From IMG/VR virus record IMGVR_UViG_3300036944_001289, positions 62,001 to 126,000 of that record: 64,000 nucleotides of DNA; one strand, written 5' to 3'. Positions within the stretch are counted from its first letter, which is position 1. Every line of letters begins with the position of its first letter. The position numbers and the translations under genes are program-made. Of this stretch, positions 1 through 62,917 are shown piece after piece. The notes below the pieces were generated by a model, which had not been told where the DNA came from, searched no databases, and worked only from the letters and a program-made list of their open reading frames with translations.

Positions 1-1398
1 CATTCTATTAAACGTTATGTTATTAACGTAATCTTTTTGTAGTAAAATATTACTCTCATTGTATATACTAAAATGGTTCTTTTGTAATGTACTTGTTAGA
101 TCATTTTGCTCTTGAAACAGCATAAATCTATTGGTATCATATATCATGATATAATCGTAATTATTATCTGTAATTATACTAGAAAATGAAAGGCTTGATA
201 CAGAAGATATGGTGGTATTACCCCATATAAATTTGCCTATTTTATTCTGTAATTTGTTTAAGAATAGCTTATATACATTTTTAGTTGTACTAACATATAC
301 AATGTTACTATCATTATATGATATTTTGATTTTATTACAATATTCGCCTATATCAAGAATGATATTCGTACTAACAACCTCTGCTGTAGTATCTAATAAA
401 GGTGACGATTTTACAATTACACCTGTTTTGGTCAGTATATATAAGTTTCCATTTACATCTTTCTCTATATAACAGGGTTCGTTTGTTTGAAATACTTTAC
501 TATTAACGTATTTTGTAGTAAACGTCATCTTTGAGTTGTATATGTATACTGTAAAAGAAGATCTATCATAGACGTATAATAAATCGTCAATATAACGTAC
601 AACAGATGGTTCAATCAAACCACCTATTATGTGCACTAATTTCGGGTTATTTAAAGAAACTCTACTATTATTGAGTGTTGAGTTAATACTAATCTTATAA
701 ACCTGTTTATTATCCTTATCTGCAATATATAAGTTACCGTTGCTATCTGCATCTATTGAAGATATATTTAAGAAGTTTATTTTTGAAGTTGCGTCTACCG
801 CAGTTGCAGATGCAACTGCTCTAAATGTATTAAATTGATTATTAAAATTAAATATGAAATATGCGCTTGGTGTCTGTGTTACTACGTTTAGATTATCACC
901 GTAAAAATTCTTTACTAATAATATATCACTTATTGCAGTTAGTTGCGGGTTTACAGACTGTATACCATATGCACCGGAGTTAGCTGATGATTTCCAGTTT
1001 AATAAGGTGCCTCCGTTTGAAGTAACAGACGCATAGGCGGTATAACCATTCGGTAAGTTATTAGTTAATGCAGAGCATCGTCTGTATAAATCGAAAAAAT
1101 TACTAATGATTTTACCAATTTTTAAATTAATCGAATTCGAATTTACGATTTCATTACTGCTAAAGGTTATATCCTGTTCGTTATACGGTAACGATGTATC
1201 TGTGAGCGGGGTATAGTTAAAATATCCTTCGTTGATAATAAAATCATTTAAAATGTTAGATTGGTTCTGTAATTGTGCGGAAGTATTTGTATAATATCTA
1301 TTAACATATGCAATATTGTCTTTCAGGTTATAAAAACCTGTATATGCAGACCCGTTATAGGTAAACGTATCACCTTCTGTGTAATTATAAATGTTCAT
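1..1398 (-). CDS. Virion structural protein with NHL/beta-propeller-like repeats (runs off window start; absent from ORF track)
   Basis: Hand translation from ATG at 1398 (ATGA overlap with the upstream stop): MNIYNYTEGDTFTYNG...SSIDADSNGNLYIADKDNKQVYKI...IEKDVNGNLYILTKTG; open to position 1. Confidence 0.7.
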   Translation of the reverse strand, partial: MNIYNYTEGDTFTYNGSAYTGFYNLKDNIAYVNRYYTNTSAQLQNQSNILNDFIINEGYFNYTPLTDTSLPYNEQDITFSSNEIVNSNSINLKIGKIISNFFDLYRRCSALTNNLPNGYTAYASVTSNGGTLLNWKSSANSGAYGIQSVNPQLTAISDILLVKNFYGDNLNVVTQTPSAYFIFNFNNQFNTFRAVASATAVDATSKINFLNISSIDADSNGNLYIADKDNKQVYKISINSTLNNSRVSLNNPKLVHIIGGLIEPSVVRYIDDLLYVYDRSSFTVYIYNSKMTFTTKYVNSKVFQTNEPCYIEKDVNGNLYILTKTGVIVKSSPLLDTTAEVVSTNIILDIGEYCNKIKISYNDSNIVYVSTTKNVYKLFLNKLQNKIGKFIWGNTTISSVSSLSFSSIITDNNYDYIMIYDTNRFMLFQEQNDLTSTLQKNHFSIYNESNILLQKDYVNNITFNRM

Positions 1399-4300
1399 CG
1401 TATGTCAAGATTGTATGTAATATCGCTTATATTTGAAGGTAGTATAGATCTAACTCTATCATTAACTACACTTGTCAAAGAGCTTGCGGTTGTACTATCA
1501 ACGTCTAATCCTTTAATATAAACTAATACTTTATTAGATAATCTACCAGGTATGTTATACTTGAAGATATTATCTACGGTTTCTATAGAATTTCTATCAT
1601 CACAAGTGAAGTCGATGTTTATATTGTCTATAGTTATACCTCTCATATAGAGATACTTAATAAAGTCATCTGATAAGGATATGTTGTATATATTAAAATC
1701 TGATACATCGAAACCTGTTGCAATTATTTTTTGATTTGTTATGTAGTCTGTTATTGACTTGTCACTATAATTCTGATTACCTAAGTATAGAATATTTTTA
1801 ACTATAGTGTCAATAGATAATAAATTAGTAGGTGTACTAATGGAATTAGTTAGTACACCATTAACGTAAACATTAATTACACCGTCGAGTAAATTAAAGT
1901 CCATATCAATATGGTTATCTAGGTATTGTAATGGTATTACGTCAATAATTGAATTATCGTTCAGTACATTAACTGAAGAGTAATTAAACGCCCAATACGA
2001 TACAGGTGTGATTGCAGACCAACTGTGAGCATATGTACTCCATACTCTTGCAGATGTTTGTGTAATAAATGTATTTGGTAAGTTTACTGTTAAACAAAGC
2101 TTATCTTCGTAATTTTTATACGTATTTTCTGCGAAGTAAAATCCAGTACAGTTAACAAACGCGTTATTTCCAGACACTGAAGAAATTGATAGGCTATATG
2201 TTGATAGAATCTTACCTGTAGTAAGGGATATCTTATCAGCAATAATATTATTATTAGTGTCTCTTGAAAAGATTAAAGGTAGAGTTTTATAATCTTCGGA
2301 TATAAAGTCTATTTTGAAACCGTTGACAGCTGACTCTGAAAGGCTTATAGTAGATAATAGCTCTCTATCTGTATTAAAAATCTTTAAGCTATTGTTACTC
2401 TGAATATAGAGATTATTATCGTGACTACTTATATCGTCTATTTTATAGACTGTACTCAACCCGACATACGAGGTATTTGTAGGTAGATTAGTAAACAATA
2501 CATATTTGTCTGATGACAGACTTGCACCAAAAGTATCGTTAATATTTATACCTTTTTCTCCAGGTAATGTAAAGGTACTATCTGTTGATGTGGTAATTAC
2601 TGAACTTGCCCCGTTAGATAGTGTTGTTGAGAGAGCAGTTACGAGTGTCTGTAGATCTGTAATGTAGACAGGGCATGGTGATACATTTTTGGTGGTAAAT
2701 ATAGCTTTATTACCTTTACCATAAAAGTGTCTGCTAGCAACCGATGTTTTAATTCCGTCAGGTATATCTGTATTGTAATTAATTATTTGACCGGTAATGT
2801 CAGTTCTAAATAACCCGTTAGATGTGCGTAATACTATATCTGTTGTTTGTGAAACATAACAGATATCAGATATGTTACCTACAGCAACAGGGTCATATGT
2901 ATTCTTTTTTATAAGATTGAAATCAGTATCATAAAAATACACCGCATTGTTTTGCTGTATAATTATGAAAGGTGTAAAGTAAAAATTTTTACGTAATGCA
3001 AAACCTATATTATAATTGTTACCTAATAACTGATATGCTTTTGCATTTTCGAAATCTTTTGCTTTTATCCTAAAGGATACGTTAAATCTACCAGTACCTA
3101 TACTACCTATATCAAAGCTATCATATACAGAACCGTTAAGTAATAGTTGTTCAGTTTCAGGTTCTTCATTACCTGTATTTATATCGTAAGGTATAATAGT
3201 TTGTCTAAGTAAATTAACGTCTTTACCACTTAAAACATTTTCTATATATTTATTACCTATTCTTGCATAGTAGTAAGTACTATTTGGTTCGAACATTAGT
3301 GCTGACTGTATATCATAAAAATTTAATTTAGTTAGTCCGATATTTTCTACAAAACTATCTAGCTCTGATTTAAATGTAAACACCTGCGATGTACTAGAAC
3401 TGAGTGCATTTATGTATGATGTATTTTGTGGTATATAATATCTATCGTACCAAATACCATCTATGATATTAAACCATGAGCATAAAAATATACCATTTGA
3501 CTCGTTAGCAGTATTAACATTTTTGTTATTATCAAGTAATTTATAAACCCTATCACTAAAGTAAGGAGAAGTTGCAGCGTAAGCACCAGCTTCTTTTAAC
3601 CCGGAATCGTTTATATTAATTCTTGTAAAAGGTGCTATTGTATCAGGCAATGTAAATTTGGTATACTTATCAGGTGTTATTAAGTACTCTTTTGTAAAAA
3701 AATTAAAACCAAGCTGTAATTTTTCGTTAGATGTTTCTTGATAGTCGTTTGTTATAATTGCATTATAATTACGTTGTTGCTTGTTTTTAAAGAAAGGTAC
3801 TCTATTTACAAAGTTATTTTTAGAAGTATAATTTTTTAAGTTAAAAAGATCTACATTACCATCGACTGATGTTGCAGATGGTGTCCAGGTTTCGTAAGGT
3901 GAATATACTAAGAAGTTATTTTTTATATTGGTTAACGAATTATTATTATCTATATTAACACCTGATGTATATAATACAAAATTTTGAGTATTATATACAT
4001 TTGTGTCTCTTGCTTGTCGATTAGTTAAAAAATTTATTCTAGTTTTATTTAGCGCTGAAGGTGTACCTACACTTAAACTATAGACAGCGCTTGAAGGTGC
4101 ACCGTAAACTAACCACCCAGTGCCACTTGTAAGTGTGCAGAATAGGTTAATGATATTATTATCAGAGTCGTATAGATAATTAAAATATGTTGCTGATGCT
4201 GGTGAAAATATTAAGGTGTTGCTAATATTCTCTCGTACAAATAGATATTTTTTGTAATACTTATCATAACTCCAAAGTAAGCATATATTTTCACCACTAG

Positions 4301-4688
4301 TTAATGTATAAAAATCAATTACGAAATTTTGAGCATAACTTGAATTACTTGCTGTTATAGTTGCTTGCGATGCTGAAACCAAACTGTTTGGTATTAATGT
4401 AACGTATTGATTTGGTGTATCTTCTATATAAAGTTGTGTAACAATAGAGTTGTTTAAACGCTCAGGTAAGATCTCATCCATTATATCTTCTTTAGAAAAA
4501 TTAAATGTGAGATAGTTATCTGTATAATTCTTTATTATACAGTCGTTAGAACTTAAGAGAAAATTGTATTCTGTCAATATACTACCTTGCTGTGTACCAT
4601 ACGTAACACTATCAAGATTAGCGGTATCATCTGTAAGCGTGAGATTTACAGGTTTAAGCGTACTATAATATTCAATACCAATAGCCAT
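1395..4688 (-). CDS. Large beta-rich virion structural protein (1097 aa), possible LamG/ConA-like C-terminal domain
   Basis: S/T/N/Y-rich; C-terminal INVYVNG...LYLG...DFNIYN pattern; late-promoter TAAATA just upstream; structural gene context. Confidence 0.55.
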   Translation of the reverse strand: MAIGIEYYSTLKPVNLTLTDDTANLDSVTYGTQQGSILTEYNFLLSSNDCIIKNYTDNYLTFNFSKEDIMDEILPERLNNSIVTQLYIEDTPNQYVTLIPNSLVSASQATITASNSSYAQNFVIDFYTLTSGENICLLWSYDKYYKKYLFVRENISNTLIFSPASATYFNYLYDSDNNIINLFCTLTSGTGWLVYGAPSSAVYSLSVGTPSALNKTRINFLTNRQARDTNVYNTQNFVLYTSGVNIDNNNSLTNIKNNFLVYSPYETWTPSATSVDGNVDLFNLKNYTSKNNFVNRVPFFKNKQQRNYNAIITNDYQETSNEKLQLGFNFFTKEYLITPDKYTKFTLPDTIAPFTRININDSGLKEAGAYAATSPYFSDRVYKLLDNNKNVNTANESNGIFLCSWFNIIDGIWYDRYYIPQNTSYINALSSSTSQVFTFKSELDSFVENIGLTKLNFYDIQSALMFEPNSTYYYARIGNKYIENVLSGKDVNLLRQTIIPYDINTGNEEPETEQLLLNGSVYDSFDIGSIGTGRFNVSFRIKAKDFENAKAYQLLGNNYNIGFALRKNFYFTPFIIIQQNNAVYFYDTDFNLIKKNTYDPVAVGNISDICYVSQTTDIVLRTSNGLFRTDITGQIINYNTDIPDGIKTSVASRHFYGKGNKAIFTTKNVSPCPVYITDLQTLVTALSTTLSNGASSVITTSTDSTFTLPGEKGININDTFGASLSSDKYVLFTNLPTNTSYVGLSTVYKIDDISSHDNNLYIQSNNSLKIFNTDRELLSTISLSESAVNGFKIDFISEDYKTLPLIFSRDTNNNIIADKISLTTGKILSTYSLSISSVSGNNAFVNCTGFYFAENTYKNYEDKLCLTVNLPNTFITQTSARVWSTYAHSWSAITPVSYWAFNYSSVNVLNDNSIIDVIPLQYLDNHIDMDFNLLDGVINVYVNGVLTNSISTPTNLLSIDTIVKNILYLGNQNYSDKSITDYITNQKIIATGFDVSDFNIYNISLSDDFIKYLYMRGITIDNINIDFTCDDRNSIETVDNIFKYNIPGRLSNKVLVYIKGLDVDSTTASSLTSVVNDRVRSILPSNISDITYNLDIR

Positions 4689-4711
4689 TTAACAATATTT
4701 ACAAAATAGTA

Positions 4712-5530
4712 TTAGCTATCTACATCAGAATACCATTTTTGTAAAACTTCAGTTGAGATAAATTCGCTAAAATGATCAAAAACAGGCTTTGTATCTAAGT
4801 TTAATTCTTTATGACCTATAAAATAATTTTTTACCTTATCTTCAAGTGTTAGCCTATATGGTACACCGTTAGGTCTTGCAAATCTATGTAACCATCGTAA
4901 AAATGGTAGACATAAAACTTTTTTACCATTTTTACGATATTTTTCATGTATATAACCTTCTTCACCACCAAAACCTCTAAATTTAGAGTTAAATCCTAAC
5001 CATGCGTCTTTTCTGCAAGCAAATAGACCCATTCCTTGAGCAGGTATTTCAAACGGTTGATTATTTATATTCAATCCACGAGGATCTGTACCCCAGGTAC
5101 CCCACATTTGACCTCTCCAAACTAAGTCAAAATGTGTGGAAATGTGTTTTATATCATCATATAACAGTGGACCGTGTAATAGATTTCCTTCATCTAACCC
5201 TTTAACAAAAAAATCTATTAATATTTTTATTGATCCTGGATATAGTAGTACGTGACTATCGATACACATAACATACGGTGTATTTGCATATTCAAATATT
5301 TTACCTTTTACGAAAGTTGATGAGTACTCCCTAAAAGGTATAACTTTACCATTTGGAACTGAGGATATAAAACTTCTTAATGCCTCACCATGCTTACTAT
5401 CTGGATTGTTATCAACAACAATTATTTCAATATCGTTAAGTACTTCAGAATGATATAGTCTAATCGACTGTATCGTAAAGTACACACCATCATAATCATC
5501 AAACGTTGGAATTCCAATTGTTAGCTTCAT
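4712..5530 (-). CDS. Family 2 (GT-A) glycosyltransferase
   Basis: LTIGIPTF, IIVVDNNP, YVMCIDSH (DxD-like), FRGFGGEE motifs. Confidence 0.85.
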   Translation of the reverse strand: MKLTIGIPTFDDYDGVYFTIQSIRLYHSEVLNDIEIIVVDNNPDSKHGEALRSFISSVPNGKVIPFREYSSTFVKGKIFEYANTPYVMCIDSHVLLYPGSIKILIDFFVKGLDEGNLLHGPLLYDDIKHISTHFDLVWRGQMWGTWGTDPRGLNINNQPFEIPAQGMGLFACRKDAWLGFNSKFRGFGGEEGYIHEKYRKNGKKVLCLPFLRWLHRFARPNGVPYRLTLEDKVKNYFIGHKELNLDTKPVFDHFSEFISTEVLQKWYSDVDS

Positions 5531-8500
5531 TGTATGTATCTATTAATACCTGTTGTAGTTTATTTTCAACTTCTACAATTTCGAGTTCATTTACAGTTAT
5601 ATCTCTACTATAATAGGAAAATACTCTGCTTGAATAATAATTAATACCATCTAGTCTAGAAGTTGGATTAGGTGGGTATACAACACTAAGTGATTGGTTG
5701 AAATATATTTCTTCTATAGGTACTCTATTAGATATTGGTGTACTGTATACATTAGGTGCTGGGTAATAAGTTCTGGAGGTTAATGCAAAAGAATTTGTTA
5801 ACCCACTATTATAAAACGCCATCACATGGCACCCGTCTGATAATGAAGGTGTACGGGTATTTAAAGGTAATATATCTACTGCTACATCATTACATATTAT
5901 AAGTTGCCACACTCTATAAAGGTAGTAATCTATACCGTTTACTGTTATATTTGTGGCACATGCCGGGAAAGTATGCGTTGTATTTCCTGGTATAATATCC
6001 CGTCTAGACGTAAATTGTAAGGGTGAGTTAAATTCAAGATATTGAGGTGTGTTTGATTGAGTTGTAGTAGTCGTTGTGCTAGTAGTTGTGGTAGGTGTGT
6101 TTGATTGAGTTGTAGTAGTCGTTGTGCTAGTAGTTGTGGTAGGTGCTGTAGATAATGCTATTGTGTTTAATCCAATATTGTAAAATTGTCTACCGGATAA
6201 TGTTATTGTATGTGGTGTCTCAGTTTGAGTCTCTACACTTATGTTTTTTATAACAGGTATATGAGATGGTATCGTTCCAGACCAAGGTGATATATTTAAT
6301 GAGTCTACTATACGGTCTATTCTACAAATAAATCCACTTGCATCGTTAGTAGGCGTTCTACCCGCAAATATCAAACCCACACATTTCCATGTTGATAATG
6401 AAGGTATAGTTGAGCTTAATAAAGCAAATACAGCTGTTCCAGAATCTCCACCCTGGGTTACTGGAAATGCTTTTTCTTTACTTCTCAATGTAATACAGTC
6501 TTTAAATAATAAAGGTTTAGTGTTAGTGTAAACATTTACAAGTGAACTTGCACCTATGCTATCAATTATAATCTTATCGTTCGTTCTATTATTAATACCA
6601 AAACAACCATCTACATTATAGCCTAAAACACTAAAACTACTATTGGAGTTAAAAAGTAGAGTTTCCTTGTTACTGTTACTTGAAGAAAATACACCATATA
6701 CATCATCCGCTGTAATCCCTGGTATTTTCGTAAACGTGTTAGAGTTAGCTTGTGCTTGTATAGCAGTTAAAGGGTTTGTGCTGTATGTTACATTGTAATT
6801 ACTATTACTATCTGTATTCTTTTTAACATAAATTTCACCACCAGATAGAATACCTGTAACTGAATTGTATCCATCATTTACCGCTTTTATATTACCTTTA
6901 AAACTTGGATAAAATATTATACTTGTGCCTTGACTAGATGAACTAAAAATTTCACATAATACATCATTTGTAGATAGTGCAAATAACCTCGAAGATAATA
7001 AATTACAGTCTAATATTTTTTTAAAATTACCAACATTTAAAATATTGCTATTTAATGAATAAGGGGTATTAGTAACAGGAAATGAAGAAAAAGATGCGTA
7101 GTTATAGTAAGAAGGTATAGAATAAAAGATTTTATTACCTGATAATGCAACAAGTGAGTAGTTAAATAAAGCTATTTGGTCCCACTCACCAGGTAACTCA
7201 ACCCAAGTAGTTGTACTATCTGCAGATAGACCATAACCAATAGTCTGACTAGTACTATTGTTTCCTATCACATTTATCTTCTTGTCTTTTAAGATATAAA
7301 TATTTCCGGAATATATTTTTAAATCTATATTATCATAATTAGGTAATTGATTCGGTAGTACGCTGTACCTGTCAGAATAATTATATTGGTATCTAGTGCT
7401 AGTTCCTGACGAGTATAGTTTATTATCTACACCTAAACCTACAAAAAAAGTATTATCTAACCAAACGTCTTTAAACTTCATAGGTAATAGACCAAATTCT
7501 AATCTACTACCACCTGGTACTATATTTATATTACCAAAAAAAAGCAAATTAAAAGAACCATGACCACAGTGATATACGTCTGTACCACTAAAACCAAATA
7601 GAGTTGTACCGTAATATGTTTTATAGTGTTTTACCTTTGTAAATATGCTAGACAATTGTGTTTGATTGGTTATAAGATCTATTGGTACTGCATGGGTATC
7701 TTTTGTATATATGTTTCCAGGAAACCCCATAGGCCCTAATGTTCTACCACTTCTGAATACAGGTGATTGAAAATTAGGTGAATTAGGGTCAAGTAAAGAA
7801 TCAATCTCTTGTGTTGTTGCAAATTGATAAGGTCCAGGTACATTAAACCCTATAACTTGATTAGAAGATGTATCTATAATGTTATAATTTTGTATATGTA
7901 CAAGGGCTGCATCAATGTAATTATTATCTAAATTAAATGTTTGACACCTCTTATGTCTACCTATAGTATGTTGAGGCCATATTGATATAGCACCATAAGG
8001 TGTGTATTGTGAAGATGCTGGCTGCCTTGCAGATAAAATAGCTGTATTTAAATTTGTACCAGATACAGATAGATAACCAGACATTTGACTCTGCGCATAC
8101 ACGTGGTTGTTTGAAAGACAGCAAATCGAGTTATCTGTATTATCTTTAACGATCAATCCTAATGTAGCGTCGGAACCTAATGTATGAATTGATGATACAC
8201 CACTTTTCAATGGTCTATGTATGTTTCTTGAAATACTTAGAGGTATTACAAGAGGGTCCATGGTATTAAAATAGGTTGTTGCTTGGATTTTAATATCTTC
8301 TACTTGGTGCGGTACGTATATAGGTAATTCACCGCTCAAATTCTCTACATTATTATAACTATCTAAAGTACTAATCGTACCAGTCTCTAACACATCTGTA
8401 ATAACGTCTGTACCATCTAAAGTAATTGTTAGAGGTAATATCTCTTCAGGTAACAACTCTTCGATTGATTTCTTTTTTGTAACAAAAAACTTAACACATA

Positions 8501-8618
8501 TCTCATCAGTATCAATTAAATCTACTTCTTTGGTAGATATGCACCAGCCTACAACGTTAGGGTATTGATCTGAAAAATTCTGTGCGTTTAGAAACTCTTT
8601 TAAGCTCGTTATATTCAT
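5499..8618 (-). CDS. Nal1-type trypsin-like serine protease with a large internal insertion and Thr-rich stalk (1039 aa)
   Basis: N-terminal VVG...CVKFFVTKK...ILP...TDVLETG domain; TLG...LSNNHV (His172), IDAAL (Asp236), RSGRTLG, GGDSG (Ser726), VGLIFAG. Confidence 0.75.
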   Translation of the reverse strand: MNITSLKEFLNAQNFSDQYPNVVGWCISTKEVDLIDTDEICVKFFVTKKKSIEELLPEEILPLTITLDGTDVITDVLETGTISTLDSYNNVENLSGELPIYVPHQVEDIKIQATTYFNTMDPLVIPLSISRNIHRPLKSGVSSIHTLGSDATLGLIVKDNTDNSICCLSNNHVYAQSQMSGYLSVSGTNLNTAILSARQPASSQYTPYGAISIWPQHTIGRHKRCQTFNLDNNYIDAALVHIQNYNIIDTSSNQVIGFNVPGPYQFATTQEIDSLLDPNSPNFQSPVFRSGRTLGPMGFPGNIYTKDTHAVPIDLITNQTQLSSIFTKVKHYKTYYGTTLFGFSGTDVYHCGHGSFNLLFFGNINIVPGGSRLEFGLLPMKFKDVWLDNTFFVGLGVDNKLYSSGTSTRYQYNYSDRYSVLPNQLPNYDNIDLKIYSGNIYILKDKKINVIGNNSTSQTIGYGLSADSTTTWVELPGEWDQIALFNYSLVALSGNKIFYSIPSYYNYASFSSFPVTNTPYSLNSNILNVGNFKKILDCNLLSSRLFALSTNDVLCEIFSSSSQGTSIIFYPSFKGNIKAVNDGYNSVTGILSGGEIYVKKNTDSNSNYNVTYSTNPLTAIQAQANSNTFTKIPGITADDVYGVFSSSNSNKETLLFNSNSSFSVLGYNVDGCFGINNRTNDKIIIDSIGASSLVNVYTNTKPLLFKDCITLRSKEKAFPVTQGGDSGTAVFALLSSTIPSLSTWKCVGLIFAGRTPTNDASGFICRIDRIVDSLNISPWSGTIPSHIPVIKNISVETQTETPHTITLSGRQFYNIGLNTIALSTAPTTTTSTTTTTTQSNTPTTTTSTTTTTTQSNTPQYLEFNSPLQFTSRRDIIPGNTTHTFPACATNITVNGIDYYLYRVWQLIICNDVAVDILPLNTRTPSLSDGCHVMAFYNSGLTNSFALTSRTYYPAPNVYSTPISNRVPIEEIYFNQSLSVVYPPNPTSRLDGINYYSSRVFSYYSRDITVNELEIVEVENKLQQVLIDTYNEANNWNSNV
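6045..6145. repeat. Perfect 48-bp tandem duplication encoding PTTTTSTTTTTTQSNT x2
   Basis: aggtgtgtttgattgagttgtagtagtcgttgtgctagtagttgtggt at 6045 and 6093, then a partial third copy. Confidence 0.95.
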
Positions 8619-8619
8619 T

Positions 8620-9846
8620 TTATATTATATTTATATTACCTGAAACTGACGGTGTTAATGCGTTTACGTAGCATATAGTACCTGTAGATGATGGTGTCCA
8701 CATGATTGTACCTGTGGTTATACCTGAGGTACTGTTGTTACCGTATATATCTGTTATTGACGATGTGTCAAGTGCACTATTTCTTATTGCAAACGGTATA
8801 GATGTACCTACTATGAGGTCGTAATTAGTGTTAGCAGATAGTGTAATTGTTGGATTACTACCTGATGATTGATCTGTTCTAAATTCACCACTAAAAGACG
8901 ATACGTTTATAACTACAGAGCTTGAAGTAAACAACATACTATAAACTGTAGTAGTTGGTGAGGGTGTAGTAGTTGTGGTCGTTGTCGTTGTAGTTGTGGT
9001 CGTTGTGGTTGTTGTGGGGTCGGGTGGGTCGATCGGTGGTAGAGTTGTTGTAGTTGTAGTAGTTGTTATTGGTATTTCAGGTTCTGGTATTATAATAGGT
9101 GGTAGGGATATTATAGGATCCGGTGCACTGCCTAATGAAAATAGTAAGTTACCGTCAATACTACCATTAAAATTTATATTTTTAACCTTTATAGGAAAAT
9201 TACCAGACCATGTTATACCTACACGCACACTATCAGGTACTTTACTTAAATCTATATTCGTATTATATGTTACAACTTGTTTATATATATCGTCTTCATA
9301 CGTATATAACGTTACCTGTTGCATATTGTTTTTAAATGCAACTCTAAATACATTCCATTCATCATTGAATGGTTTTGCAAAACCAGGTATATAATTCGAA
9401 CCAACGTATTCAAATGAGGATAGTTTTCTTACAACAAAGCTACTAGGCTGTAATGTATTAGTACCTGTATTAAATTGTTGTAATCCACCGTTTGATGTAA
9501 AAATACCATCTACATCATACATCGCACACATAAAAAAACCACTAACTGCTGAAAAAGGTGTTGTGTTAGTATCCGTAATAATACCTAAACCACCACCAGC
9601 ACCACCACCAGTTAATGTAGTTACTCTGCTATCTAATAGAAATACACCAAAACCATCATATATTGTGGAGAACTGCAAACCTAAAAAGTCATCATTTTGC
9701 AATAAGAGTCTGTCACCTGTTTGCAATAATAAGTTACCTAAAGATACTCTTTCTTCAGGGTCTTGTATCAAAAACGAAACAGTTATATCATTATCTGTTT
9801 TAAATGCTTGTTTATAAAGTATATTGCTACAAAAACCTGATGACAT
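8620..9846 (-). CDS. Virion protein: lectin/ConA-like N-domain, Pro/Thr-rich linker, small beta-sandwich C-domain
   Basis: DGFGVFL...GGGLG and VRVGITWSG resemble legume-lectin-type motifs; PIITTTTTTTTT/PDPTTTT(18) linker; WTP..GTICY...SGNI C-terminus; TAAATA-N5-ATG. Confidence 0.55.
   Translation of the reverse strand: MSSGFCSNILYKQAFKTDNDITVSFLIQDPEERVSLGNLLLQTGDRLLLQNDDFLGLQFSTIYDGFGVFLLDSRVTTLTGGGAGGGLGIITDTNTTPFSAVSGFFMCAMYDVDGIFTSNGGLQQFNTGTNTLQPSSFVVRKLSSFEYVGSNYIPGFAKPFNDEWNVFRVAFKNNMQQVTLYTYEDDIYKQVVTYNTNIDLSKVPDSVRVGITWSGNFPIKVKNINFNGSIDGNLLFSLGSAPDPIISLPPIIIPEPEIPITTTTTTTTLPPIDPPDPTTTTTTTTTTTTTTTTTPSPTTTVYSMLFTSSSVVINVSSFSGEFRTDQSSGSNPTITLSANTNYDLIVGTSIPFAIRNSALDTSSITDIYGNNSTSGITTGTIMWTPSSTGTICYVNALTPSVSGNINII
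8945..9070. repeat. Low-complexity poly-Thr codon tract
   Basis: Runs of (gtt/gta/gtg/gtc) on the + strand are ACN codons on the - strand. Confidence 0.9.
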
Positions 9847-9867: not shown

Positions 9868-10347
9868 TCAATTAGTAAAGAACCCGGATTTATCTAAAGT
9901 ACCTTTAAATTTAACTTGTTGTGTTTTGAATCTTGGTATTACAATTGTAAAATCGATAATATATTGAGATTCATCAAAAAGAGGTGTGACATTTATATTT
10001 TTAATAGATATCCTAGGTTCAAACTTGGTAACTGCATTTAATATTGTTTCACCTACGAGTCTTGCACGTTGCTCTGTTACAGGTAAGAATAGAAGGTCCC
10101 CAAAGTTGCAGCCAAAAGGTGGATTTAATATTTTTTCCCCTGGTGATGTAGTTAGTATACTCGTTATTGAGTTCTTAATTGCACCTTCGTTATTGTCAAC
10201 TTGTATATCAGCAATTTGACGTATTTTAGCTAGCTCATCACTAAACGTTCTATTTAGCTGTAAATCCATTCTAATATCGGTGTATATATTAGTGTTACTT
10301 CTATTTGCATCTGTATTTTGTAAAAAATCTAGCACAATCTTTGCCAT
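9868..10347 (-). CDS. gp25: Baseplate wedge protein gp25-like
   Basis: AIKNSITSILTTSPGEKILNPPFG...FEPRI signature. Confidence 0.9.
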   Translation of the reverse strand: MAKIVLDFLQNTDANRSNTNIYTDIRMDLQLNRTFSDELAKIRQIADIQVDNNEGAIKNSITSILTTSPGEKILNPPFGCNFGDLLFLPVTEQRARLVGETILNAVTKFEPRISIKNINVTPLFDESQYIIDFTIVIPRFKTQQVKFKGTLDKSGFFTN

Positions 10348-24967: not shown

Positions 24968-25672
24968 ATGTGGATATATAAGATAAATATAGATGATTAT
25001 GAATACATAGGATCAACATATAATAAAAAAGGCCCTGAAGAAAGAAGAAGACAACATGTAAGAGGGTTAATCAAGGGCACACACGTTAACAAGAAGATGC
25101 AAAATGTCTTTAATAAACATCAAACTTTTAGATATACCGTTTTATGTTCCTGTCTTAAATTAGAGCACTTAATACATATTGAGGAAGAATTTATATTGCA
25201 ATCTATGAACGTATTAAAAGATAAATGTCTTAACTTAACGTTATCTTATTCAGGTGGTAGTGGTTGGATGAAGTTTAAGAGCTCGGAAGAGATTCAAAAA
25301 ATACATAGCAAAAGAAGATTATCACCCAGCAGACAACAAATAAGAAATTTAGCCCATAAACAAACGTTACAGGCTAAGTCTGAAGAGGAAAAAGAAAAGA
25401 TATATAAAAAGCAATCTGATGGTCGTAAAAAGAATTTAGTAAACCGTAAAAATTATACACCTATTAATTTAGAAATAACAATACCTGGCGGAAGACCTAG
25501 TGTAGATATATACCATACAGAGCAGGATTTTTTTAAAAAGACAAGATTTGAAACCTCTACACTTTGCACATTAAAGCAGCATGGAATACATGTAGTAAAA
25601 AGAATTTTACCTAACACAAAACACAACTACCCAAAGGGTACTATTGTAAAGTTTATAGAGGTTCAGAAATAA
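24968..25672 (+). CDS. Free-standing GIY-YIG homing endonuclease
   Basis: WIYKI...YIGST...RRQH...H.NKKMQNVFNK...IEEE; inserted antisense between gp3 and gp18 with its own TAAATA-N5-ATG. Confidence 0.75.
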   Translation: MWIYKINIDDYEYIGSTYNKKGPEERRRQHVRGLIKGTHVNKKMQNVFNKHQTFRYTVLCSCLKLEHLIHIEEEFILQSMNVLKDKCLNLTLSYSGGSGWMKFKSSEEIQKIHSKRRLSPSRQQIRNLAHKQTLQAKSEEEKEKIYKKQSDGRKKNLVNRKNYTPINLEITIPGGRPSVDIYHTEQDFFKKTRFETSTLCTLKQHGIHVVKRILPNTKHNYPKGTIVKFIEVQK

Positions 25673-32498: not shown

Positions 32499-32564
32499 CC
32501 CCTGCTGCGGAATTAACTTACTATTTTTAAGTTGATTCCAACTCACAAGCAAATAAATAATTAT

Positions 32565-33587
32565 GTGAGTATAATATATAAAGCAAAACATAAAAACGTT
32601 AAAGATAAAGAAGAAGAAATTATAACAGCGTATTTGCAGGGAGAATCGATTGGTGATTTAGCTCGCAAATACGCTGTTTCTCTATATGTGGTTGATCAAA
32701 TTCTAATCAAAAACAACATCCAAAAAAGAACATATGAGGAAGCTAATGATCTCAAAGTTCAAAAATTATATTATAATGATAATATCTTAGAAAAATATAA
32801 AGAAGGAGCTTTGCTATATCAACAAGGTATACCTCTTTACAAAATCATTAAACAACTCAACATTGCTGAGTATAGATTAGTGCAATTCCTTAAAGAAAAT
32901 AGCATACCTTTACGTACACGTTCTGAAATTCAATCTGCATTATCAGTTAGACCTTGGGGTCAGAAAATTAAAGGTCCTGACATAATTCAAAAAATTATAG
33001 AAGAATATAATCAAGGTGTAGGTTGTGTTGAGTTAGCACAAAAATATAATGTTGTTCATGGTACTATTCGATTACTATTAAAACGTAATGGTATTAAGTT
33101 TAGAACATGTAAAGAAACACAGTCTTCTGAATACACTAAAAACTACATTAAACAGAAAAATCTAAATAAATACGGTGTGGTTAGCACTATGCAACTACCT
33201 GAAGTTTTTGAGAAGGCTCAAAAATCTATGTTCAAGTATAAAACCACTATAATAGAAGGTGTAGAGTTTCAACATTTACGTGGTTATGAAGAGTATGGTA
33301 TCCGATATATCCTAGAGCATTTTGATGATGTAATTGTTACTGATATACTTGCAGGTAATGATGTTTATAATCTTAATATTCCTTACAACCATCAAGGTAA
33401 AGATAGGGTGTATTTTCCTGATATTTTTATACCGAAATTTAATTGTTTGGTTGAAGTAAAAAGTGATTACACTTATAACCTAGACATCGATCGCAACATT
33501 GCTAAAAAAGAAGCTGCTGAAAAGATAGGTTATACACATATTACTTTAATTTTTGATAAAAAAGGTAATTTGATAAAACGACTTTAA
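32565..33587 (+). CDS. Free-standing PD-(D/E)XK endonuclease with HTH repeats (putative homing endonuclease)
   Basis: Three Y..G.....LA.KY.V HTH-like repeats, KYGV..MQ, RGYE, YFPDIF...LVEVKS; GTG start 5 nt after TAAATA. Confidence 0.75.
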   Translation: MSIIYKAKHKNVKDKEEEIITAYLQGESIGDLARKYAVSLYVVDQILIKNNIQKRTYEEANDLKVQKLYYNDNILEKYKEGALLYQQGIPLYKIIKQLNIAEYRLVQFLKENSIPLRTRSEIQSALSVRPWGQKIKGPDIIQKIIEEYNQGVGCVELAQKYNVVHGTIRLLLKRNGIKFRTCKETQSSEYTKNYIKQKNLNKYGVVSTMQLPEVFEKAQKSMFKYKTTIIEGVEFQHLRGYEEYGIRYILEHFDDVIVTDILAGNDVYNLNIPYNHQGKDRVYFPDIFIPKFNCLVEVKSDYTYNLDIDRNIAKKEAAEKIGYTHITLIFDKKGNLIKRL

Positions 33588-35231: not shown

Positions 35232-35534
35232 TTATTTATTCTCTCGATTCCTTTTATACTGAGCTGTACATAAACTATAAACTTGCTTAGGTAATTCTTC
35301 ATTTACCTTTTCCACAATATTATTGTCTATTGCAAATTTAAATTTATCGAATGATATAACCCTATTTACCATATTCGGAATCGAAAGGAAACAATGGGAA
35401 TCGTTAATATCTTCTATGTATATAAACATCTCTCCTGCATAGTCCCCAGTTTGGACTGCATATATGTCCTTAGACTTTAGGTGTATTTTGTTTGTACCAA
35501 TCGATTGTTTCTTGAATGCTTTTATTAAATTCAT
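35232..35534 (-). CDS. Hypothetical protein
   Basis: 100-aa ORF. Confidence 0.55.
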   Translation of the reverse strand: MNLIKAFKKQSIGTNKIHLKSKDIYAVQTGDYAGEMFIYIEDINDSHCFLSIPNMVNRVISFDKFKFAIDNNIVEKVNEELPKQVYSLCTAQYKRNRENK

Positions 35535-36441
35535 ACTTAGGCTTCCAGTTTGTTAGTAGTTTAATCTTTGTAGAATCAATTGCGTATCTAAAATCATGTC
35601 CTTTTCTATCTTCTACAAACTTTATAGTATCCTCAGGTAACACGTTCATATGTTTACATATGGTCGTAATAACATCTAAGTTAGTCATCTCTTCCCCAGA
35701 CCCAATATTATAAACATTACCTGATTTACCTTGATTATATAAATTCCATATTGCATCTACATGATCAACCACATGAATCCACTCTCGTACATTTTTACCA
35801 GTACCATAAACAGGTACGCTTTTACCATTAAGTATATTTGTGATTGTTTTCGGAATAAGTTTTTCATGATGCTGTTTTGAGCCGTAATTATTGCTACATC
35901 TTGTTATTATTGTATCTAACCCGTATGTATCATTATATGATTTTACTATAAGATCGCTACTCGCTTTAGATGCAGAGTATGGTGATCTCGGTGATAATGG
36001 TGTATATTCTGTAAATGGTTTATCATTTTCATGTAAATGCCCATAGACTTCATCCGTACTTACATGTATAAATCTACCATGTGCACCGTTTTTTCTCCAA
36101 CCTTCTAGTAGTTTGTGTGTACCTATGACATTAGATTCTGTAAAAACAAGTGGCCCTGTAATACTATTATCAACATGACTTTCTGCAGCGAAATGAAAGA
36201 TAGCATCGAACTGCTTATACTTACAGCTTTCGAAAAAAATATCAGTTGAGCATGTAGCAAGGTCAAACTCAAAGTTTATCATGCCGATAGTATCGTATTG
36301 TTTCTTTAAATTGTTTTTATTAGATGCGTAACCTTTTTTATCAATGGTATAAATCTCTGCATCGACTTTATTATCGAGAAAATCTATAAAATGGCTACCT
36401 ATAAAGCCATATGCTCCTGTTACTAAAAATCTTTTCATCAT
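35470..36441 (-). CDS. rmlB: dTDP-glucose 4,6-dehydratase
   Basis: VTGAYGFIG, HFAAESHVD, STDEVYG, YSASK, NNYG, DRKGHDFRY. Confidence 0.95.
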   Translation of the reverse strand: MMKRFLVTGAYGFIGSHFIDFLDNKVDAEIYTIDKKGYASNKNNLKKQYDTIGMINFEFDLATCSTDIFFESCKYKQFDAIFHFAAESHVDNSITGPLVFTESNVIGTHKLLEGWRKNGAHGRFIHVSTDEVYGHLHENDKPFTEYTPLSPRSPYSASKASSDLIVKSYNDTYGLDTIITRCSNNYGSKQHHEKLIPKTITNILNGKSVPVYGTGKNVREWIHVVDHVDAIWNLYNQGKSGNVYNIGSGEEMTNLDVITTICKHMNVLPEDTIKFVEDRKGHDFRYAIDSTKIKLLTNWKPKYEFNKSIQETIDWYKQNTPKV

Positions 36442-37349
36442 ATTTTGCATACTGTTGTATTTGTTCTAGTTTCTATTGCTCTTACAAAGTTAGCAGCATC
36501 AAGTAGATCTGCGTGTGTACCGCAATCAAACCATGCTGTGTGGTTATCGAGTAAATGAAGTGCTATATTTTTTTCTTTAATGTATTGATTGATAACATCA
36601 ACGATTTCAAGTTCACCTCTTTTAGATGGTTTACAATTTTTTGCTTTTTCTATGCAGGTTTCATCAAAAAAGTATAGACCAGGTATTGCGTAATTAGTCG
36701 GTGGTATCTCAGGTTTTTCTACAACACCTGCAATATCACCACTTTCATCTAAAACTGCTACACCGTAAGCAGATGGGTTCTTTACTTTATAACCAAATAT
36801 AACATTCTCATTAGGCATTATATTTTTTATATCTGTATCGAATTGCGAACCGTAAAAAAGATTATCTCCAAGTACGAGAGCAGTAGGGCAACCTTTAATA
36901 TATTGTTCTGCAAGAATAAAAGCTTCAGATAAACCTTTTGGATCGTCTTGAATAACAAACCTATACGTAAACTTAATATTATCTGGGTTTATATTATTTA
37001 GAAGATTTTGAAATGCCGGCTTATCTATAGTTTTCACTATAAAAGTAATATCTTCAACTCCAGCTGCTAGTAATGTACTAATTGGGTATTCTACCATTAC
37101 ATGATTATAAACAGGTAATAACTGCTTACAAGTGCAATAGGTAAGTGGTCTTAGTCTAGTGCCATGCCCTCCTGCTAAAATTATACCTTTTCTTTTCATC
37201 TCTTTATTAACGCTATTTTTTTCGGATTTCAAGTACTTTTCTGCGAGAGGTGTTAATTGCATTTTAAACGCTTTGAGCTGTCTGATTGCTTCTTCTCTAG
37301 TTTTAAGAGTATTCCTTAATCTGTCTGCAAGTGTTGGCCATTTACTCAT
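36438..37349 (-). CDS. rmlA: Glucose-1-phosphate thymidylyltransferase (50-aa N-terminal extension; core starts at 37199)
   Basis: KGIILAGGHGTRLRPLT, KQLLPV, LGDNLF, EKP, RGELEI, WFDCGT. Confidence 0.93.
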   Translation of the reverse strand: MSKWPTLADRLRNTLKTREEAIRQLKAFKMQLTPLAEKYLKSEKNSVNKEMKRKGIILAGGHGTRLRPLTYCTCKQLLPVYNHVMVEYPISTLLAAGVEDITFIVKTIDKPAFQNLLNNINPDNIKFTYRFVIQDDPKGLSEAFILAEQYIKGCPTALVLGDNLFYGSQFDTDIKNIMPNENVIFGYKVKNPSAYGVAVLDESGDIAGVVEKPEIPPTNYAIPGLYFFDETCIEKAKNCKPSKRGELEIVDVINQYIKEKNIALHLLDNHTAWFDCGTHADLLDAANFVRAIETRTNTTVCKI

Positions 37350-38289: not shown

Positions 38290-38961
38290 TTATAGATTAA
38301 AAGCAGCAATAGTATGTTTGAATGGATCTCCAGGGATTTCTTTGACTAACTTAAGCATCTCTGCTGCAATATCTCTAATCTCTTCTTGTGCATCGAGTTT
38401 GTTTCTAAGATTTAGGAAATGATAAAAACTTCTCCAGTTAAACATTATATCGCAATCAATTTGTGAATTATACGTTTTAAAGAAACGTGCAGATTCTTTA
38501 GCACGTTTACGTCCTAAAGTCTTTTCTAAATCCTTGAGTGCAGCGTGATAAAGATCATTACTAATCTCTGTATGGATTTGCAGAATATCATACCAATCTT
38601 TACCATTATGCTTCTCTAAATACTTTCCTGTAAGTGACACTGCTTTAATATTCTTCCAGTCTTCAGGTAAATAAAACTTATCCTCTTTTAGCTCTTTGTA
38701 GCGTGCAGATTCACCATTAATTGATACTCCAATACGGTGCTTTAATTTATGTATATGTGATGCAATGTCACTAGTTACTAAGAAATGTAGAGATGATTTT
38801 TCAAAAGGAGTATGATGACCATTTTCTGCTAACATTTTTAACAAACTTGGTATTCTTTCACGCTTATCATTGGTTATTTCTCTACTTGTTGAAGTCCACG
38901 CAGAACATGCATGTACTTCATCACTACCGTAAAAACCTAAAAGCTTTATTTCGTTATTCAT
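38290..38961 (-). CDS. thyX: Flavin-dependent thymidylate synthase
   Basis: H.TPFE, KHR...SINGESARY, KESARF, NWRS...LR...AQEEIR. Confidence 0.92.
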   Translation of the reverse strand: MNNEIKLLGFYGSDEVHACSAWTSTSREITNDKRERIPSLLKMLAENGHHTPFEKSSLHFLVTSDIASHIHKLKHRIGVSINGESARYKELKEDKFYLPEDWKNIKAVSLTGKYLEKHNGKDWYDILQIHTEISNDLYHAALKDLEKTLGRKRAKESARFFKTYNSQIDCDIMFNWRSFYHFLNLRNKLDAQEEIRDIAAEMLKLVKEIPGDPFKHTIAAFNL

Positions 38962-62707: not shown

Positions 62708-62917
62708 ATGATAAGTTTTAAAAAATTCTATGCTATTTTTAAAGAAGATAGCTCTTACTCAGATGGTACATTAGGGCCTGCTGCAAATGTATCTCACAAT
62801 GCAATAGCCAATAGCGATTGGTATGCACCTGGTGACTATAGAATACCAAAAGGTGGTAGAGTATATAGACGCAGTGGTGTTGTAAAGCGTAAAAAGAGAC
62901 GTAAATACAAAAAATGA
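62708..62917 (+). CDS. Small basic late protein (69 aa)
   Basis: MISFKKFYAIFKED...KRKKRRKYKK; TATAAATA upstream. Confidence 0.6.
   Translation: MISFKKFYAIFKEDSSYSDGTLGPAANVSHNAIANSDWYAPGDYRIPKGGRVYRRSGVVKRKKRRKYKK

What the first reader, a model, noticed from the sequence alone, without database searches (positions are those of the whole stretch)
4712..9846. Probable virion O-glycosylation module: GT2 embedded beside mucin-like Thr stalks
Seen: two adjacent structural-region proteins carry long Thr/Pro tracts (PTTTTSTTTTTTQSNT x2; T9 and T18 runs). The next gene, overlapping by 32 nt, is a GT2. The window also encodes dTDP-sugar synthesis and two further glycosyltransferases. Known: virion glycosylation is described for some actinophages and giant viruses. 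Inference: the phage glycosylates (perhaps rhamnosylates) mucin-like linkers on its appendages.
Basis: inference. Interest (0 to 1): 0.65.

Follow-up and report, generated by a model that had tools for sequence, protein, structure and literature searches.

The report
Phage mucin-type glycosyltransferase beside poly-threonine proteins
A 209-kb T4-like phage carries, among its baseplate and tail-fibre genes, a small enzyme shaped like the animal enzymes that start mucin glycosylation. It sits right after two proteins with long threonine runs, and the same pairing recurs in hundreds of phages and bacteria, so the enzyme very probably puts sugars on those runs.

Summary
A 272-aa GT-A glycosyltransferase (4712-5530, minus strand) overlaps by 32 nt the end of a 1039-aa protein carrying PTTTTSTTTTTTQSNT twice. 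That protein follows a 408-aa protein with T8 and T17 runs (not T9/T18). These are the only Thr tracts in the 209-kb genome.

The enzyme's confident model is closest to polypeptide GalNAc-transferases (GT27), the initiators of mucin-type O-glycosylation. It keeps the D-x-H motif, a WGGE-like motif and a late His.

- **Phage pairing.** Among 49 dereplicated phage relatives, the ORF just upstream has a Thr tract in 27 of 47 cases, against 19 of 951 other ORFs. The partner proteins are mostly unrelated to each other.
- **Run positions.** Every run of ten or more Thr codons in 27 related records (about 3.3 Mb) lies within 5.3 kb upstream of the enzyme gene.
- **Natural control.** A sister phage lacks the enzyme, the 1039-aa gene and the Thr linker together.
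- **Bacterial relatives.** They are fused or adjacent to PqqD peptide-binding domains and HprK-like domains, beside small poly-Thr peptides.

Thr-tract glycosylation is therefore well supported but unproven. Virion location rests on gene context only. Rhamnose is not supported: no RmlC, and the nearest enzymes use UDP-sugars. I found no description of this family.

The parts
4712..5530 (-). GT-A glycosyltransferase, 272 aa, soluble, GT27-like. Family-invariant residues are D40-N41, D91-x-H93, E191 (E190 nearly invariant), H215-R216-F217 and R219.
   Evidence: PF00535. AF2 model pLDDT 93.6. All of the roughly 50 listed top Foldseek hits in the PDB are ppGalNAc-Ts. VIA-align gives GalNAc-T1 Z 22.8 and TgGalNAc-T3 Z 21.7, with the next family at 18.5. 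The C-terminal half aligns only to GalNAc-T7 in the PDB, E 0.24.
5499..8618 (-). p1039: a trypsin-like serine protease (H172, D236, S726) split by an insert of about 420 aa that may be a beta-propeller, followed by a Thr-rich linker and an added C-terminal domain.
   Evidence: ORF. phrog_20754 'protease'. Atlas lead to RCC1 + Trypsin_2, score 0.79, a lead only. Catalytic triad conserved in 30-33 of 33 homologues. Homologues end at ...TLSGRQFxNIGL, which is aa 805-820 of p1039.
6048..6143 (-). Mucin-like linker of p1039: PTTTTSTTTTTTQSNT twice (aa 826-857), an exact 48-nt tandem duplication. Proposed glycosylation site.
   Evidence: Codon listing. Double unitig depth across the repeat. Absent from all 33 homologues.
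5502..6047 (-). C-terminal add-on domain of p1039 (aa 858-1039), held by the Thr linker. No detectable relatives.
   Evidence: Homologues lack it. No BLASTP match in 80 related loci.
8620..9846 (-). p408: an all-beta N-terminal domain (aa 1-231, weakly concanavalin/galectin-like), a Pro/Thr linker, and a C-terminal beta domain (aa 302-408).
   Evidence: ORF. Seven homologues of 228-241 aa stop before the linker and three have linker plus C-domain. Model is poor, pLDDT 47.8. Fold hits reach Z 6.9 at most.
8947..9066 (-). Pro/Thr linker of p408 (aa 261-300): T8, LPPIDPPDP, T17, PSP, T3. Proposed glycosylation site.
   Evidence: Codon listing with mixed ACA/ACT/ACC/ACG. Predicted disordered. The only (ACN)x10 run in the genome.
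8623..8943 (-). C-terminal domain of p408 (aa 302-408), a mobile add-on domain. In other phages it also sits behind Thr tracts.
   Evidence: 47% identical domain behind a Thr tract in the 179-aa ORF L266:7456-7995, and in P0165.
9868..10347 (-). gp25-like baseplate wedge subunit, first gene of the tightly packed run gp25-p408-p1039-GT-p1097.
   Evidence: PF04965 E 1.6e-13. Intergenic gaps of 1-24 nt or overlaps.
1395..4688 (-). p1097: large conserved protein of the same run, 24 nt downstream of the GT. Homologues lie near the GT in many relatives. Probably structural.
   Evidence: BLASTP homologues in 30 or more related loci. 56% identical in the sister phage. No family hit.
1..1398 (-). N-terminal part of a 567-aa protein (it runs off the window), followed in the genome by a 226-aa tail protein and tail-fibre genes.
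   Evidence: phrog_6465/20878 tail protein, phrog_219 baseplate wedge, and an 874-aa tail fibre with RCC1 repeats.

Best explanation
The 272-aa enzyme is a soluble, Mn2+-type GT-A polypeptide glycosyltransferase, related in fold and key motifs to eukaryotic ppGalNAc-transferases. It is made in the infected cell together with its substrates: it lies in the same gene run as them and its start overlaps the end of p1039. It transfers a sugar from a nucleotide sugar, most likely a UDP-hexose or UDP-HexNAc, onto the hydroxyls of the clustered threonines in the Pro/Thr linkers of p408 (aa 261-300) and p1039 (aa 826-857).

Dense O-glycosylation would turn these disordered linkers into extended, stiff, protease-resistant mucin-like stalks. 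The stalks would hold the added distal domains away from the core proteins. Those core proteins are encoded in the baseplate and tail-fibre module and are probably virion appendages.

Shown: the sequence features, the fold, the conserved residues, and the genomic coupling in phages and bacteria. Inferred: the enzyme-substrate relation, the sugar, the effect on the linker, and virion location.
For: Fold and motifs:
- The model has pLDDT 93.6.
- Every listed top PDB hit by Foldseek is a ppGalNAc-T, E down to 3.6e-14, TM 0.72-0.76.
- By VIA-align over 48,161 representative chains, GalNAc-T1 (Z 22.8, rmsd 2.8, 253 of 272 residues) and TgGalNAc-T3 (Z 21.7) stand 3-4 Z units above the next family.
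- D91-x-H93 and H215 are invariant across phage and bacterial members.
- The family's C-terminal half hits only GalNAc-T7 in the PDB. FGGEE aligns to WGGEN, and LHRF to GHIY.

Phage synteny:
- In 49 clusters at 90% identity, the ORF just upstream (usually 13-16 nt away) has a Thr tract in 27 of 47 cases, against 19 of 951 other ORFs (odds ratio 66, p 4.5e-28). For ORFs more than 5 kb away the figure is 1 of 403.
- The 46 Thr-tract proteins fall into 30 BLAST-distinct groups.
- All (ACN)x10 runs in 27 records lie 0.1-5.3 kb upstream of the GT on its strand. There are none in 9 GT-negative relatives.

Gain and loss together:
- The sister phage locus L264 keeps gp25, the p408 core and p1097 but lacks the linker, p1039 and the GT.
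- Homologues of both p408 and p1039 elsewhere end exactly before the linker.

Bacteria:
- At least 139 homologues.
- Many are fused to HprK-related kinase A-like domains, and adjacent or fused to PqqD.
- Small ORFs with an RRxxL-type N-terminus and poly-Thr lie directly upstream.
- PqqD-type domains are the peptide-recognition elements of peptide-modifying pathways (established knowledge).
Against: - No glycan, activity or virion proteome can be observed here.
- Sequence similarity to GT27 is not significant on its own (E 0.24-0.71). The lectin domain and membrane anchor of GT27 are absent.
- The phage associations are not phylogenetically independent: many pairs share a C-terminal motif and so a common origin.
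- 13 of 49 phage clusters show no Thr tract in the fetched flank.
- In a blind scan, only 4 of 41 poly-Thr ORFs of IMG/VR with enough flank carry this GT family. Thr tracts therefore exist widely without it.
- The window's two substrates lack the C-terminal Cys motif of the usual partners.
- The p408 model is poor, so its lectin-like fold is weak.
- The complex prediction could not be run.
Confidence: 0.6

Rival explanations
1. The enzyme does glycosylate poly-Thr polypeptides, but the products are not virion parts. They would be intracellular, secreted or cell-surface mucin-like proteins made during infection, for example to coat the host and block superinfection. This parallels the bacterial homologues, which seem to act on small exported peptides.
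For: Bacterial partners are 70-125-aa peptides with twin-arginine-like N-termini. Many phage partners are only 100-290 aa and consist almost wholly of Pro/Thr-rich sequence plus a short Cys motif. No virion proteome exists.
Against: p408 and p1039 lie in one tightly packed run between gp25 and tail-fibre and baseplate genes. The p408 core is conserved at that place in the sister phage. Several partners are 700-2400-aa proteins typical of fibres. Neither p408 nor p1039 begins with the RRxxL-type motif of the bacterial peptides, by reading their N-termini; no signal-peptide predictor was run.
Confidence: 0.15
2. The Thr/Pro tracts are plain flexible linkers without sugar. The GT is merely co-inherited with them in a hypervariable host-recognition region and acts on something else.
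For: Poly-Thr ORFs are common in viral contigs without this GT. 13 of 49 GT clusters have no Thr tract in the fetched flank. Many pairs share ancestry through the common C-terminal motif.
Against: The adjacency is immediate and strand-specific, not just regional. It recurs with unrelated proteins. It also recurs in a wholly different bacterial context with PqqD domains. The fold points to polypeptide acceptors. Enzyme and linkers are gained and lost together.
Confidence: 0.1
3. The GT modifies a host surface polysaccharide such as the LPS O-chain to prevent superinfection. This is how glycosyltransferases in the host-recognition cluster of pelagimyophages have been read.
For: Published interpretation for GTs among tail-fibre genes of marine T4-like phages (PMC7029224). 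Sequence-only PDB hits are wall-teichoic-acid and chondroitin GT2 enzymes, although only over the N-terminal nucleotide-binding half.
Against: No membrane segment is apparent and the model is a compact soluble GT-A domain. GtrB scores only Z 12.2. The Thr-tract synteny and the bacterial PqqD coupling are unexplained by this reading.
Confidence: 0.07
4. The GT glycosylates phage DNA (hypermodified bases) to evade restriction.
For: Phage GTs often do so (cited in PMC12619734).
Against: The gene sits inside a structural gene run, not among nucleotide-metabolism genes. No listed fold match is a DNA glycosyltransferase. Bacterial homologues sit in peptide-modification contexts.
Confidence: 0.03

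Closest known systems
Polypeptide N-acetylgalactosaminyltransferases (ppGalNAc-T, CAZy GT27), initiators of mucin-type O-glycosylation in animals and some protists
   Same: Nearest solved structures over the whole 272 aa. D-x-H metal motif. A (W/F)GGE(N/E) motif and a following His that align to GalNAc-T7. Putative acceptors are clustered Thr in Pro-rich, disordered, mucin-like tracts.
   Different: About 15% identity with no significant sequence match. No ricin-type lectin domain, no membrane anchor, and a cytoplasmic setting. Donor sugar and stereochemistry are unknown. Encoded by phages and bacteria.
Virion glycosylation of mycobacteriophages (Freeman et al. 2023, as cited in PMC12619734)
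   Same: Phage-encoded glycosyltransferases modifying the phage's own structural proteins.
   Different: There the glycans sit at the C-termini of capsid and tail-tube subunits. Here the proposed sites are internal poly-Thr linkers of proteins in the baseplate and fibre region. The phage lineage also differs. I could not read the original paper.
Bacterial 'HprK-related kinase A' systems with a PqqD-family peptide chaperone (NCBIfam TIGR04352 and its neighbours), function unknown
   Same: Bacterial members of this GT family are fused to that kinase-like domain and adjacent or fused to PqqD.
   Different: The phage genes are stand-alone. No PqqD or HprK-like domain occurs in 80 phage loci or in this genome. 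The TIGR04352 matches are below the curated cut-off.
GT2 protein and peptide glycosyltransferases of bacteria (SunS-type S/O-glycosyltransferases of glycocins)
   Same: GT-A enzymes that act on ribosomal peptides.
   Different: A much weaker structural match: SunS Z 11.7 against 22.8 for GalNAc-T1.
Glycosyltransferases in host-recognition clusters of pelagimyophages and cyanomyophages (PMC7029224)
   Same: GT genes embedded among tail-fibre genes of aquatic T4-like phages.
   Different: Those were read as host O-chain modifiers, mostly GT8. No link to Thr-rich phage proteins was drawn there.

Membership tests
GT-A fold / Pfam Glycos_transf_2 | Match to PF00535 above the curated cut-off, and a Rossmann-like GT-A fold | tested here: met
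   35.2 bits against a cut-off of 23.3. The confident model matches about 145 GT-A chains at Z 8 or more.
GT27 ppGalNAc-T | Catalytic domain structurally closest to the GalNAc-Ts | tested here: met
   All listed top Foldseek hits. Z 22.8 and 21.7 against 18.5 for the next family.
GT27 ppGalNAc-T | D-x-H metal-binding motif in place of D-x-D | tested here: met
   D91 and H93 are invariant in 35 phage members and in 41 phage plus bacterial members. That GT27 uses D-x-H is from my own knowledge.
GT27 ppGalNAc-T | Gal/GalNAc-T motif (WGGEN...) and a third metal-binding His | tested here: inconclusive
   The only PDB hit of the C-terminal half profile is GalNAc-T7, aligning FGGEE to WGGEN and LHRF to GHIY, but at E 0.24.
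GT27 ppGalNAc-T | Significant sequence similarity, as used for CAZy family assignment | tested here: not met
   E 0.24-0.71. About 15% identity in structural alignments.
GT27 ppGalNAc-T | C-terminal ricin-type lectin domain and type II membrane anchor | tested here: not met
   The protein is 272 aa and a single domain.
GT27 ppGalNAc-T | Retaining transfer of GalNAc from UDP-GalNAc to Ser/Thr | not testable with these tools
   Needs an enzyme assay.
Phage virion glycosylation (mycobacteriophage type) | Phage GT gene next to genes of the modified structural proteins | tested here: met
   The GT overlaps p1039 and lies in the gp25-to-tail-fibre run.
Phage virion glycosylation (mycobacteriophage type) | Glycans shown on virion proteins | not testable with these tools
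   The phage is uncultured. No proteome is available.
HprK-related kinase A / PqqD peptide-modification system | HprK-like domain and PqqD-family protein in the locus | tested here: not met
   Present in 40 and 33 of 80 bacterial loci respectively. Absent from 80 phage loci and from the whole phage genome.
dTDP-L-rhamnose pathway (as donor supply) | RmlA, RmlB, RmlC and RmlD all present | tested here: not met
   RmlA-like, RmlB-like and RmlD-like genes are present. There is no PF00908 (RmlC) in the complete genome, while the control genomes do score.

The most novel reading that the evidence does not exclude
Phages and bacteria hold a large, undescribed branch of ppGalNAc-T-like enzymes that carry out mucin-type O-glycosylation of poly-threonine tracts. 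In roughly 200-kb aquatic T4-like phages it would build sugar-coated stalks on tail or baseplate appendages. In bacteria it would work within a PqqD/HprK-like peptide-modification pathway on small exported poly-Thr peptides. Mucin-type glycosylation, usually regarded as a eukaryotic invention, would then have a prokaryotic and viral counterpart or ancestor.
Probability: 0.45. Interest if true: 0.85.

Novelty: new variant of a known kind. Interest (0 to 1): 0.75.

Why it matters
Three consequences would follow if this is true.

1. Thousands of 'hypothetical' or 'cell-wall glycosyltransferase' genes of aquatic phages and many bacteria would gain a concrete function. The word search found 2986 relatives.
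2. The usual reading of glycosyltransferases among phage tail-fibre genes would change, from host-surface modification to self-glycosylation of phage proteins.
3. It would reveal a prokaryotic and viral relative of the enzymes that start mucin glycosylation.

Glycan-coated linkers on phage appendages would bear on host recognition, particle stability and adhesion in water. The small soluble enzyme could be a tool for glycosylating Thr-rich peptides in bacteria. Cultured bacteria carrying homologues make the idea directly testable: Oricola indica JL-62, Amylibacter marinus NBRC 110140, Labrys miyagiensis NBRC 101365, Bradyrhizobium diazoefficiens SZCCT0138 and Taklimakanibacter albus.

Tried and rejected
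- **Cultured-phage collection.** No DNA match for the region and no tblastn match for the GT. The sheath protein shows the phage is only distantly T4-like.
- **Family libraries for the GT.** PHROGs and NCBIfam give nothing.
- **Sequence-only PDB searches.** For the GT they reach only the N-terminal half of ordinary GT2 enzymes. A phage-only profile of the C-terminal half found nothing. p1039 and p408 gave only low-complexity noise.
- **Pfam at loose thresholds.** Nothing for p1039, p408 or p1097.
- **p408 structure.** The model is poor, pLDDT 47.8. Its fold matches (Z 6.9 at most) are only a weak lead.
- **Sister-phage record.** The whole record could not be searched because it is not held. 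Absence of the GT is therefore shown only for the syntenic 20.7 kb.
- **Reads.** Only contigs of the probable source samples (shale gas metagenome) were available, and there were no RNA runs. No tract-length variants were seen.
- **Promoter, terminator and TATAAATA scans.** All at chance level.
- **Rhamnose as the sugar.** Rejected as unsupported.
- **Literature.** No paper links a phage ppGalNAc-T-like enzyme with poly-Thr proteins, and none mentions the HprK-related kinase A system. Freeman et al. 2023 is not held.
- **Big representative search.** Not used, since the word search already gave ample relatives.

Full report
**What is there.** The window is bases 62001-126000 of a 209,282-bp viral record with direct terminal repeats and 33% G+C. 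It is a distant T4-like myovirus. It encodes gp25, clamp loader, sheath, terminase and DNA polymerase, and the sheath is at most about 40% identical to cultured phages over its C-terminal third. The source samples are labelled shale gas metagenome.

On the minus strand, five genes run almost without gaps: gp25 (9868-10347), p408 (8620-9846), p1039 (5499-8618), a 272-aa glycosyltransferase (4712-5530) and p1097 (1395-4688). The glycosyltransferase start overlaps the end of p1039 by 32 nt. Just beyond lie a 567-aa protein, a tail protein, a tail fibre with RCC1 repeats and a gp6-like baseplate wedge. So the setting is the baseplate and tail-fibre module.

**The Thr tracts.** p1039 has PTTTTSTTTTTTQSNT twice, from an exact 48-nt duplication. 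Short unitigs inside the duplication have about twice the flanking depth in the source run. p408 has T8 and T17 runs between proline clusters, written with all four Thr codons mixed. In the whole genome no other ORF has such a tract.

**Both tracts are linkers to add-on domains.**
- Thirty-three homologues of p1039 keep a catalytic triad (H172, D236, S726) split by a large insert. Where the final stretch is conserved they end at ...TLSGRQFxNIGL, exactly where the Thr linker of p1039 begins.
- Seven homologues of p408 stop at about aa 230. Only three carry the linker plus the C-terminal domain.
- The C-terminal domain of p408 recurs behind Thr tracts in other phages.
- The p408 model is poor. 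It shows an all-beta N-domain with weak concanavalin/galectin-like matches, a disordered linker, and a small beta domain.

**The enzyme.** Pfam calls it Glycos_transf_2. PHROGs and NCBIfam have no family for it.
- With 35 homologues, AlphaFold2 gives a confident model, pLDDT 93.6.
- Every listed top Foldseek hit in the PDB is a polypeptide GalNAc-transferase.
- An independent all-against-representatives alignment puts GalNAc-T1 (Z 22.8, rmsd 2.8 Å, 253 residues) and Toxoplasma GalNAc-T3 (Z 21.7) clearly above chondroitin polymerase (18.5), RmlT (17.5), TarS (16.4), SpsA (15.8), GtrB (12.2) and SunS (11.7).
- D40-N41, D91-x-H93, E191, H215, R216 and R219 are invariant in phage and bacterial members. 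E190 and H195 are nearly invariant.
- A profile of the C-terminal half, built from diverse members, hits one protein only in the whole PDB, GalNAc-T7. FRGFGGEEGYIHEK aligns to LQIWGGENFEISYK, and LPFLRWLHRF to VPCSRVGHIY (E 0.24; also E 0.71).

That score is not significant alone, but it agrees with the structure. From my own knowledge, D-x-H, WGGEN and that His are the hallmark metal and UDP-sugar motifs of GT27. The lectin domain and membrane anchor of GT27 are missing. I therefore say it works like a ppGalNAc-T catalytic domain, and I do not file it in GT27.

**Coupling to poly-Thr proteins in phages.** The family is large: 2986 relatives in the word search and 286 in IMG/VR. Many sit on contigs of 100-212 kb whose terminases are 46-54% identical to this phage's.
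- In 80 fetched loci, 57 hold a Thr-tract ORF.
- After dereplication to 49 clusters, the ORF just upstream of the enzyme gene has a tract in 27 of 47 cases. The figure is 19 of 951 for all other ORFs and 1 of 403 for ORFs more than 5 kb away (odds ratio 66, p 4.5e-28).
- These partners range from 100 to 2400 aa. After masking the tracts they fall into 30 groups without BLAST similarity.
- About half end in a shared tail, C-x3-9-C-(N/K)-x-L-x-(F/Y/W), just after the tract. Many pairs therefore share ancestry and the statistics overstate independence.
- The window's own substrates are unrelated to those partners and lack that tail. They are an independent instance.
- In 27 related records (about 3.3 Mb), runs of ten or more Thr codons occur in eight records only. 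All eight carry the enzyme, and every run lies on its strand 0.1-5.3 kb upstream. Nine fragmentary relatives without the enzyme have none.

**A natural control.** A sister phage contig of 209,205 bp is syntenic here, with gp25 72% and p1097 56% identical. It goes straight from the 228-aa p408 core to p1097. The linker, the p408 C-domain, p1039 and the enzyme are all missing. A closer relative has the same cassette as the window. Another clade has Thr-tract proteins, a p1039 homologue without a linker, and then the enzyme.

**Bacteria.** A scan of one genome per species found at least 139 homologues, 46-56% identical. They occur in Alphaproteobacteria, cable bacteria, Acidobacteriota, Chloroflexota, Planctomycetota and others, many on megabase contigs and in cultured isolates.
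- The domain is usually fused behind an HprK-related kinase A-like domain, sometimes with GT25, methyltransferase or second GT2 domains.
- PqqD proteins are adjacent, or fused as in L200.
- HprK-like and PqqD-like sequences occur in 40 and 33 of the 80 loci, and in none of the phage loci.
- Directly upstream lie one to three small ORFs with an RRxxL-type N-terminus and a poly-Thr run, for example L191:4103-4895, L198:4155-4893 and L204:4710-4934.
- Stand-alone forms in Chloroflexota and Planctomycetota follow large poly-Thr proteins.

PqqD-type domains are known peptide-recognition elements. So the family is tied to ribosomal polypeptides rich in Thr in a context unrelated to phage tails.

**Limits.**
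- The converse does not hold. In a blind scan of IMG/VR for twelve Thr codons in a row, 59 of 80 loci had a true poly-Thr ORF, but only 4 carried this enzyme family (4 of 41 with enough flank). That is far above the family's overall frequency, yet it shows poly-Thr linkers exist widely without it.
- Thirteen of 49 enzyme clusters showed no tract in the fetched flank.
- Nothing here shows a glycan, the donor sugar or virion location.

**The sugar.** The genome has RmlA-, RmlB- and RmlD-like genes about 30 kb away but no RmlC. It therefore cannot make dTDP-L-rhamnose by itself, and the nearest solved enzymes were crystallised with UDP or UDP-GalNAc (entry titles). One further GT (PF13712) and an acetyltransferase lie at 44.8-46.0 kb. 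No link to the module was found.

**Literature.** Glycosyltransferases among tail-fibre genes of pelagimyophages were read as host O-chain modifiers (PMC7029224). Virion glycosylation is known for mycobacteriophages, at capsid and tail-tube C-termini (cited in PMC12619734). I found no report of a ppGalNAc-T-like phage or bacterial enzyme coupled to poly-Thr proteins, nor of the HprK-related kinase A system.

**Verdict.** The enzyme is a ppGalNAc-T-like polypeptide glycosyltransferase, the Thr tracts are linkers to add-on domains, and rhamnose is unlikely. Virion location remains an inference. It is a new variant of a known kind of system, widespread, and readily testable.

Noticed in passing
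window 5499-8618 (-); homologues P0122-P0153: p1039 belongs to a viral family of trypsin-like serine proteases. The catalytic His172/Asp236 and Ser726 are separated by an insert of about 420 aa, possibly an RCC1- or BNR-type propeller. The triad is conserved in 30-33 of 33 members. What a protease does in a baseplate and fibre module is open.
   Followed up: partly
L016:7861-9981, L038:9464-9982, L057:9583-9984, L070:6453-9983 and about 20 more loci: About half of the phage partner proteins end in a shared tail: a Pro-rich stretch with P-L-(T/S), the poly-Thr tract, then C-x3-9-C-(N/K)-x-L-x-(F/Y/W) at the very C-terminus. The glycosyltransferase gene follows 13-16 nt later. It could be a recognition or docking element. 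The window's phage lacks it.
   Followed up: partly
L191:1660-7170, L198, L204:4710-7443, L200:1016-3621, L216:3047-6831: Bacterial gene sets of small RRxxL + poly-Thr peptides, a PqqD protein and an HprK-related-kinase-A-like domain fused to this glycosyltransferase, sometimes with GT25 or a methyltransferase. L191 has two tandem copies with three peptide genes between them. This looks like an undescribed peptide-glycosylation pathway.
   Followed up: partly
L264:10001-10711 against window 4689-9160: A sister phage of 209,205 bp lacks a cassette of about 4.5 kb (p408 linker and C-domain, p1039, glycosyltransferase) at an otherwise syntenic site.
   Followed up: yes
L266:14009-14848 against L267:6736-7605: Two near-identical contigs differ by one VAPTTTTTTT unit in a Thr-tract protein (279 against 289 aa). 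Tract length varies between close strains.
   Followed up: no
window 35470-37349 and 38958-39785 (-): RmlB-like, RmlA-like and RmlD-like genes without any RmlC in the complete genome. The product may be a dTDP-6-deoxy-D-hexose rather than L-rhamnose, unless the host supplies the epimerase.
   Followed up: partly
G007:C1:32531-35275 and G008:C1:7084-11443 (loci L099, L100, L102, L103): In two related phages the large terminase matches in two or three separate pieces spread over 2.7-4.4 kb within long open frames. This suggests inteins or other insertions.
   Followed up: no
window 24968-25672 (+), 62914-63339 (+), 32532-33587 (+), 55113-55982 (-): By eye only, several ORFs set against or between conserved genes look like homing-endonuclease-type genes, with GIY-YIG-like N-termini or repeated helix-turn-helix modules. 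Not checked with any tool.
   Followed up: no
window 48536-49288 (-): By eye only, this ORF looks like QueC (7-cyano-7-deazaguanine synthase, SGGxDS motif). That would hint at deazaguanine modification of the phage DNA. Not checked with any tool.
   Followed up: no
L035 (contig of 158 kb, 45% G+C) and L059 (43% G+C): The glycosyltransferase with adjacent poly-Thr ORFs also occurs in phages of quite different composition. For L035 the terminase is barely related to this one (E 3.9e-5). The pair has therefore moved between phage lineages.
   Followed up: no
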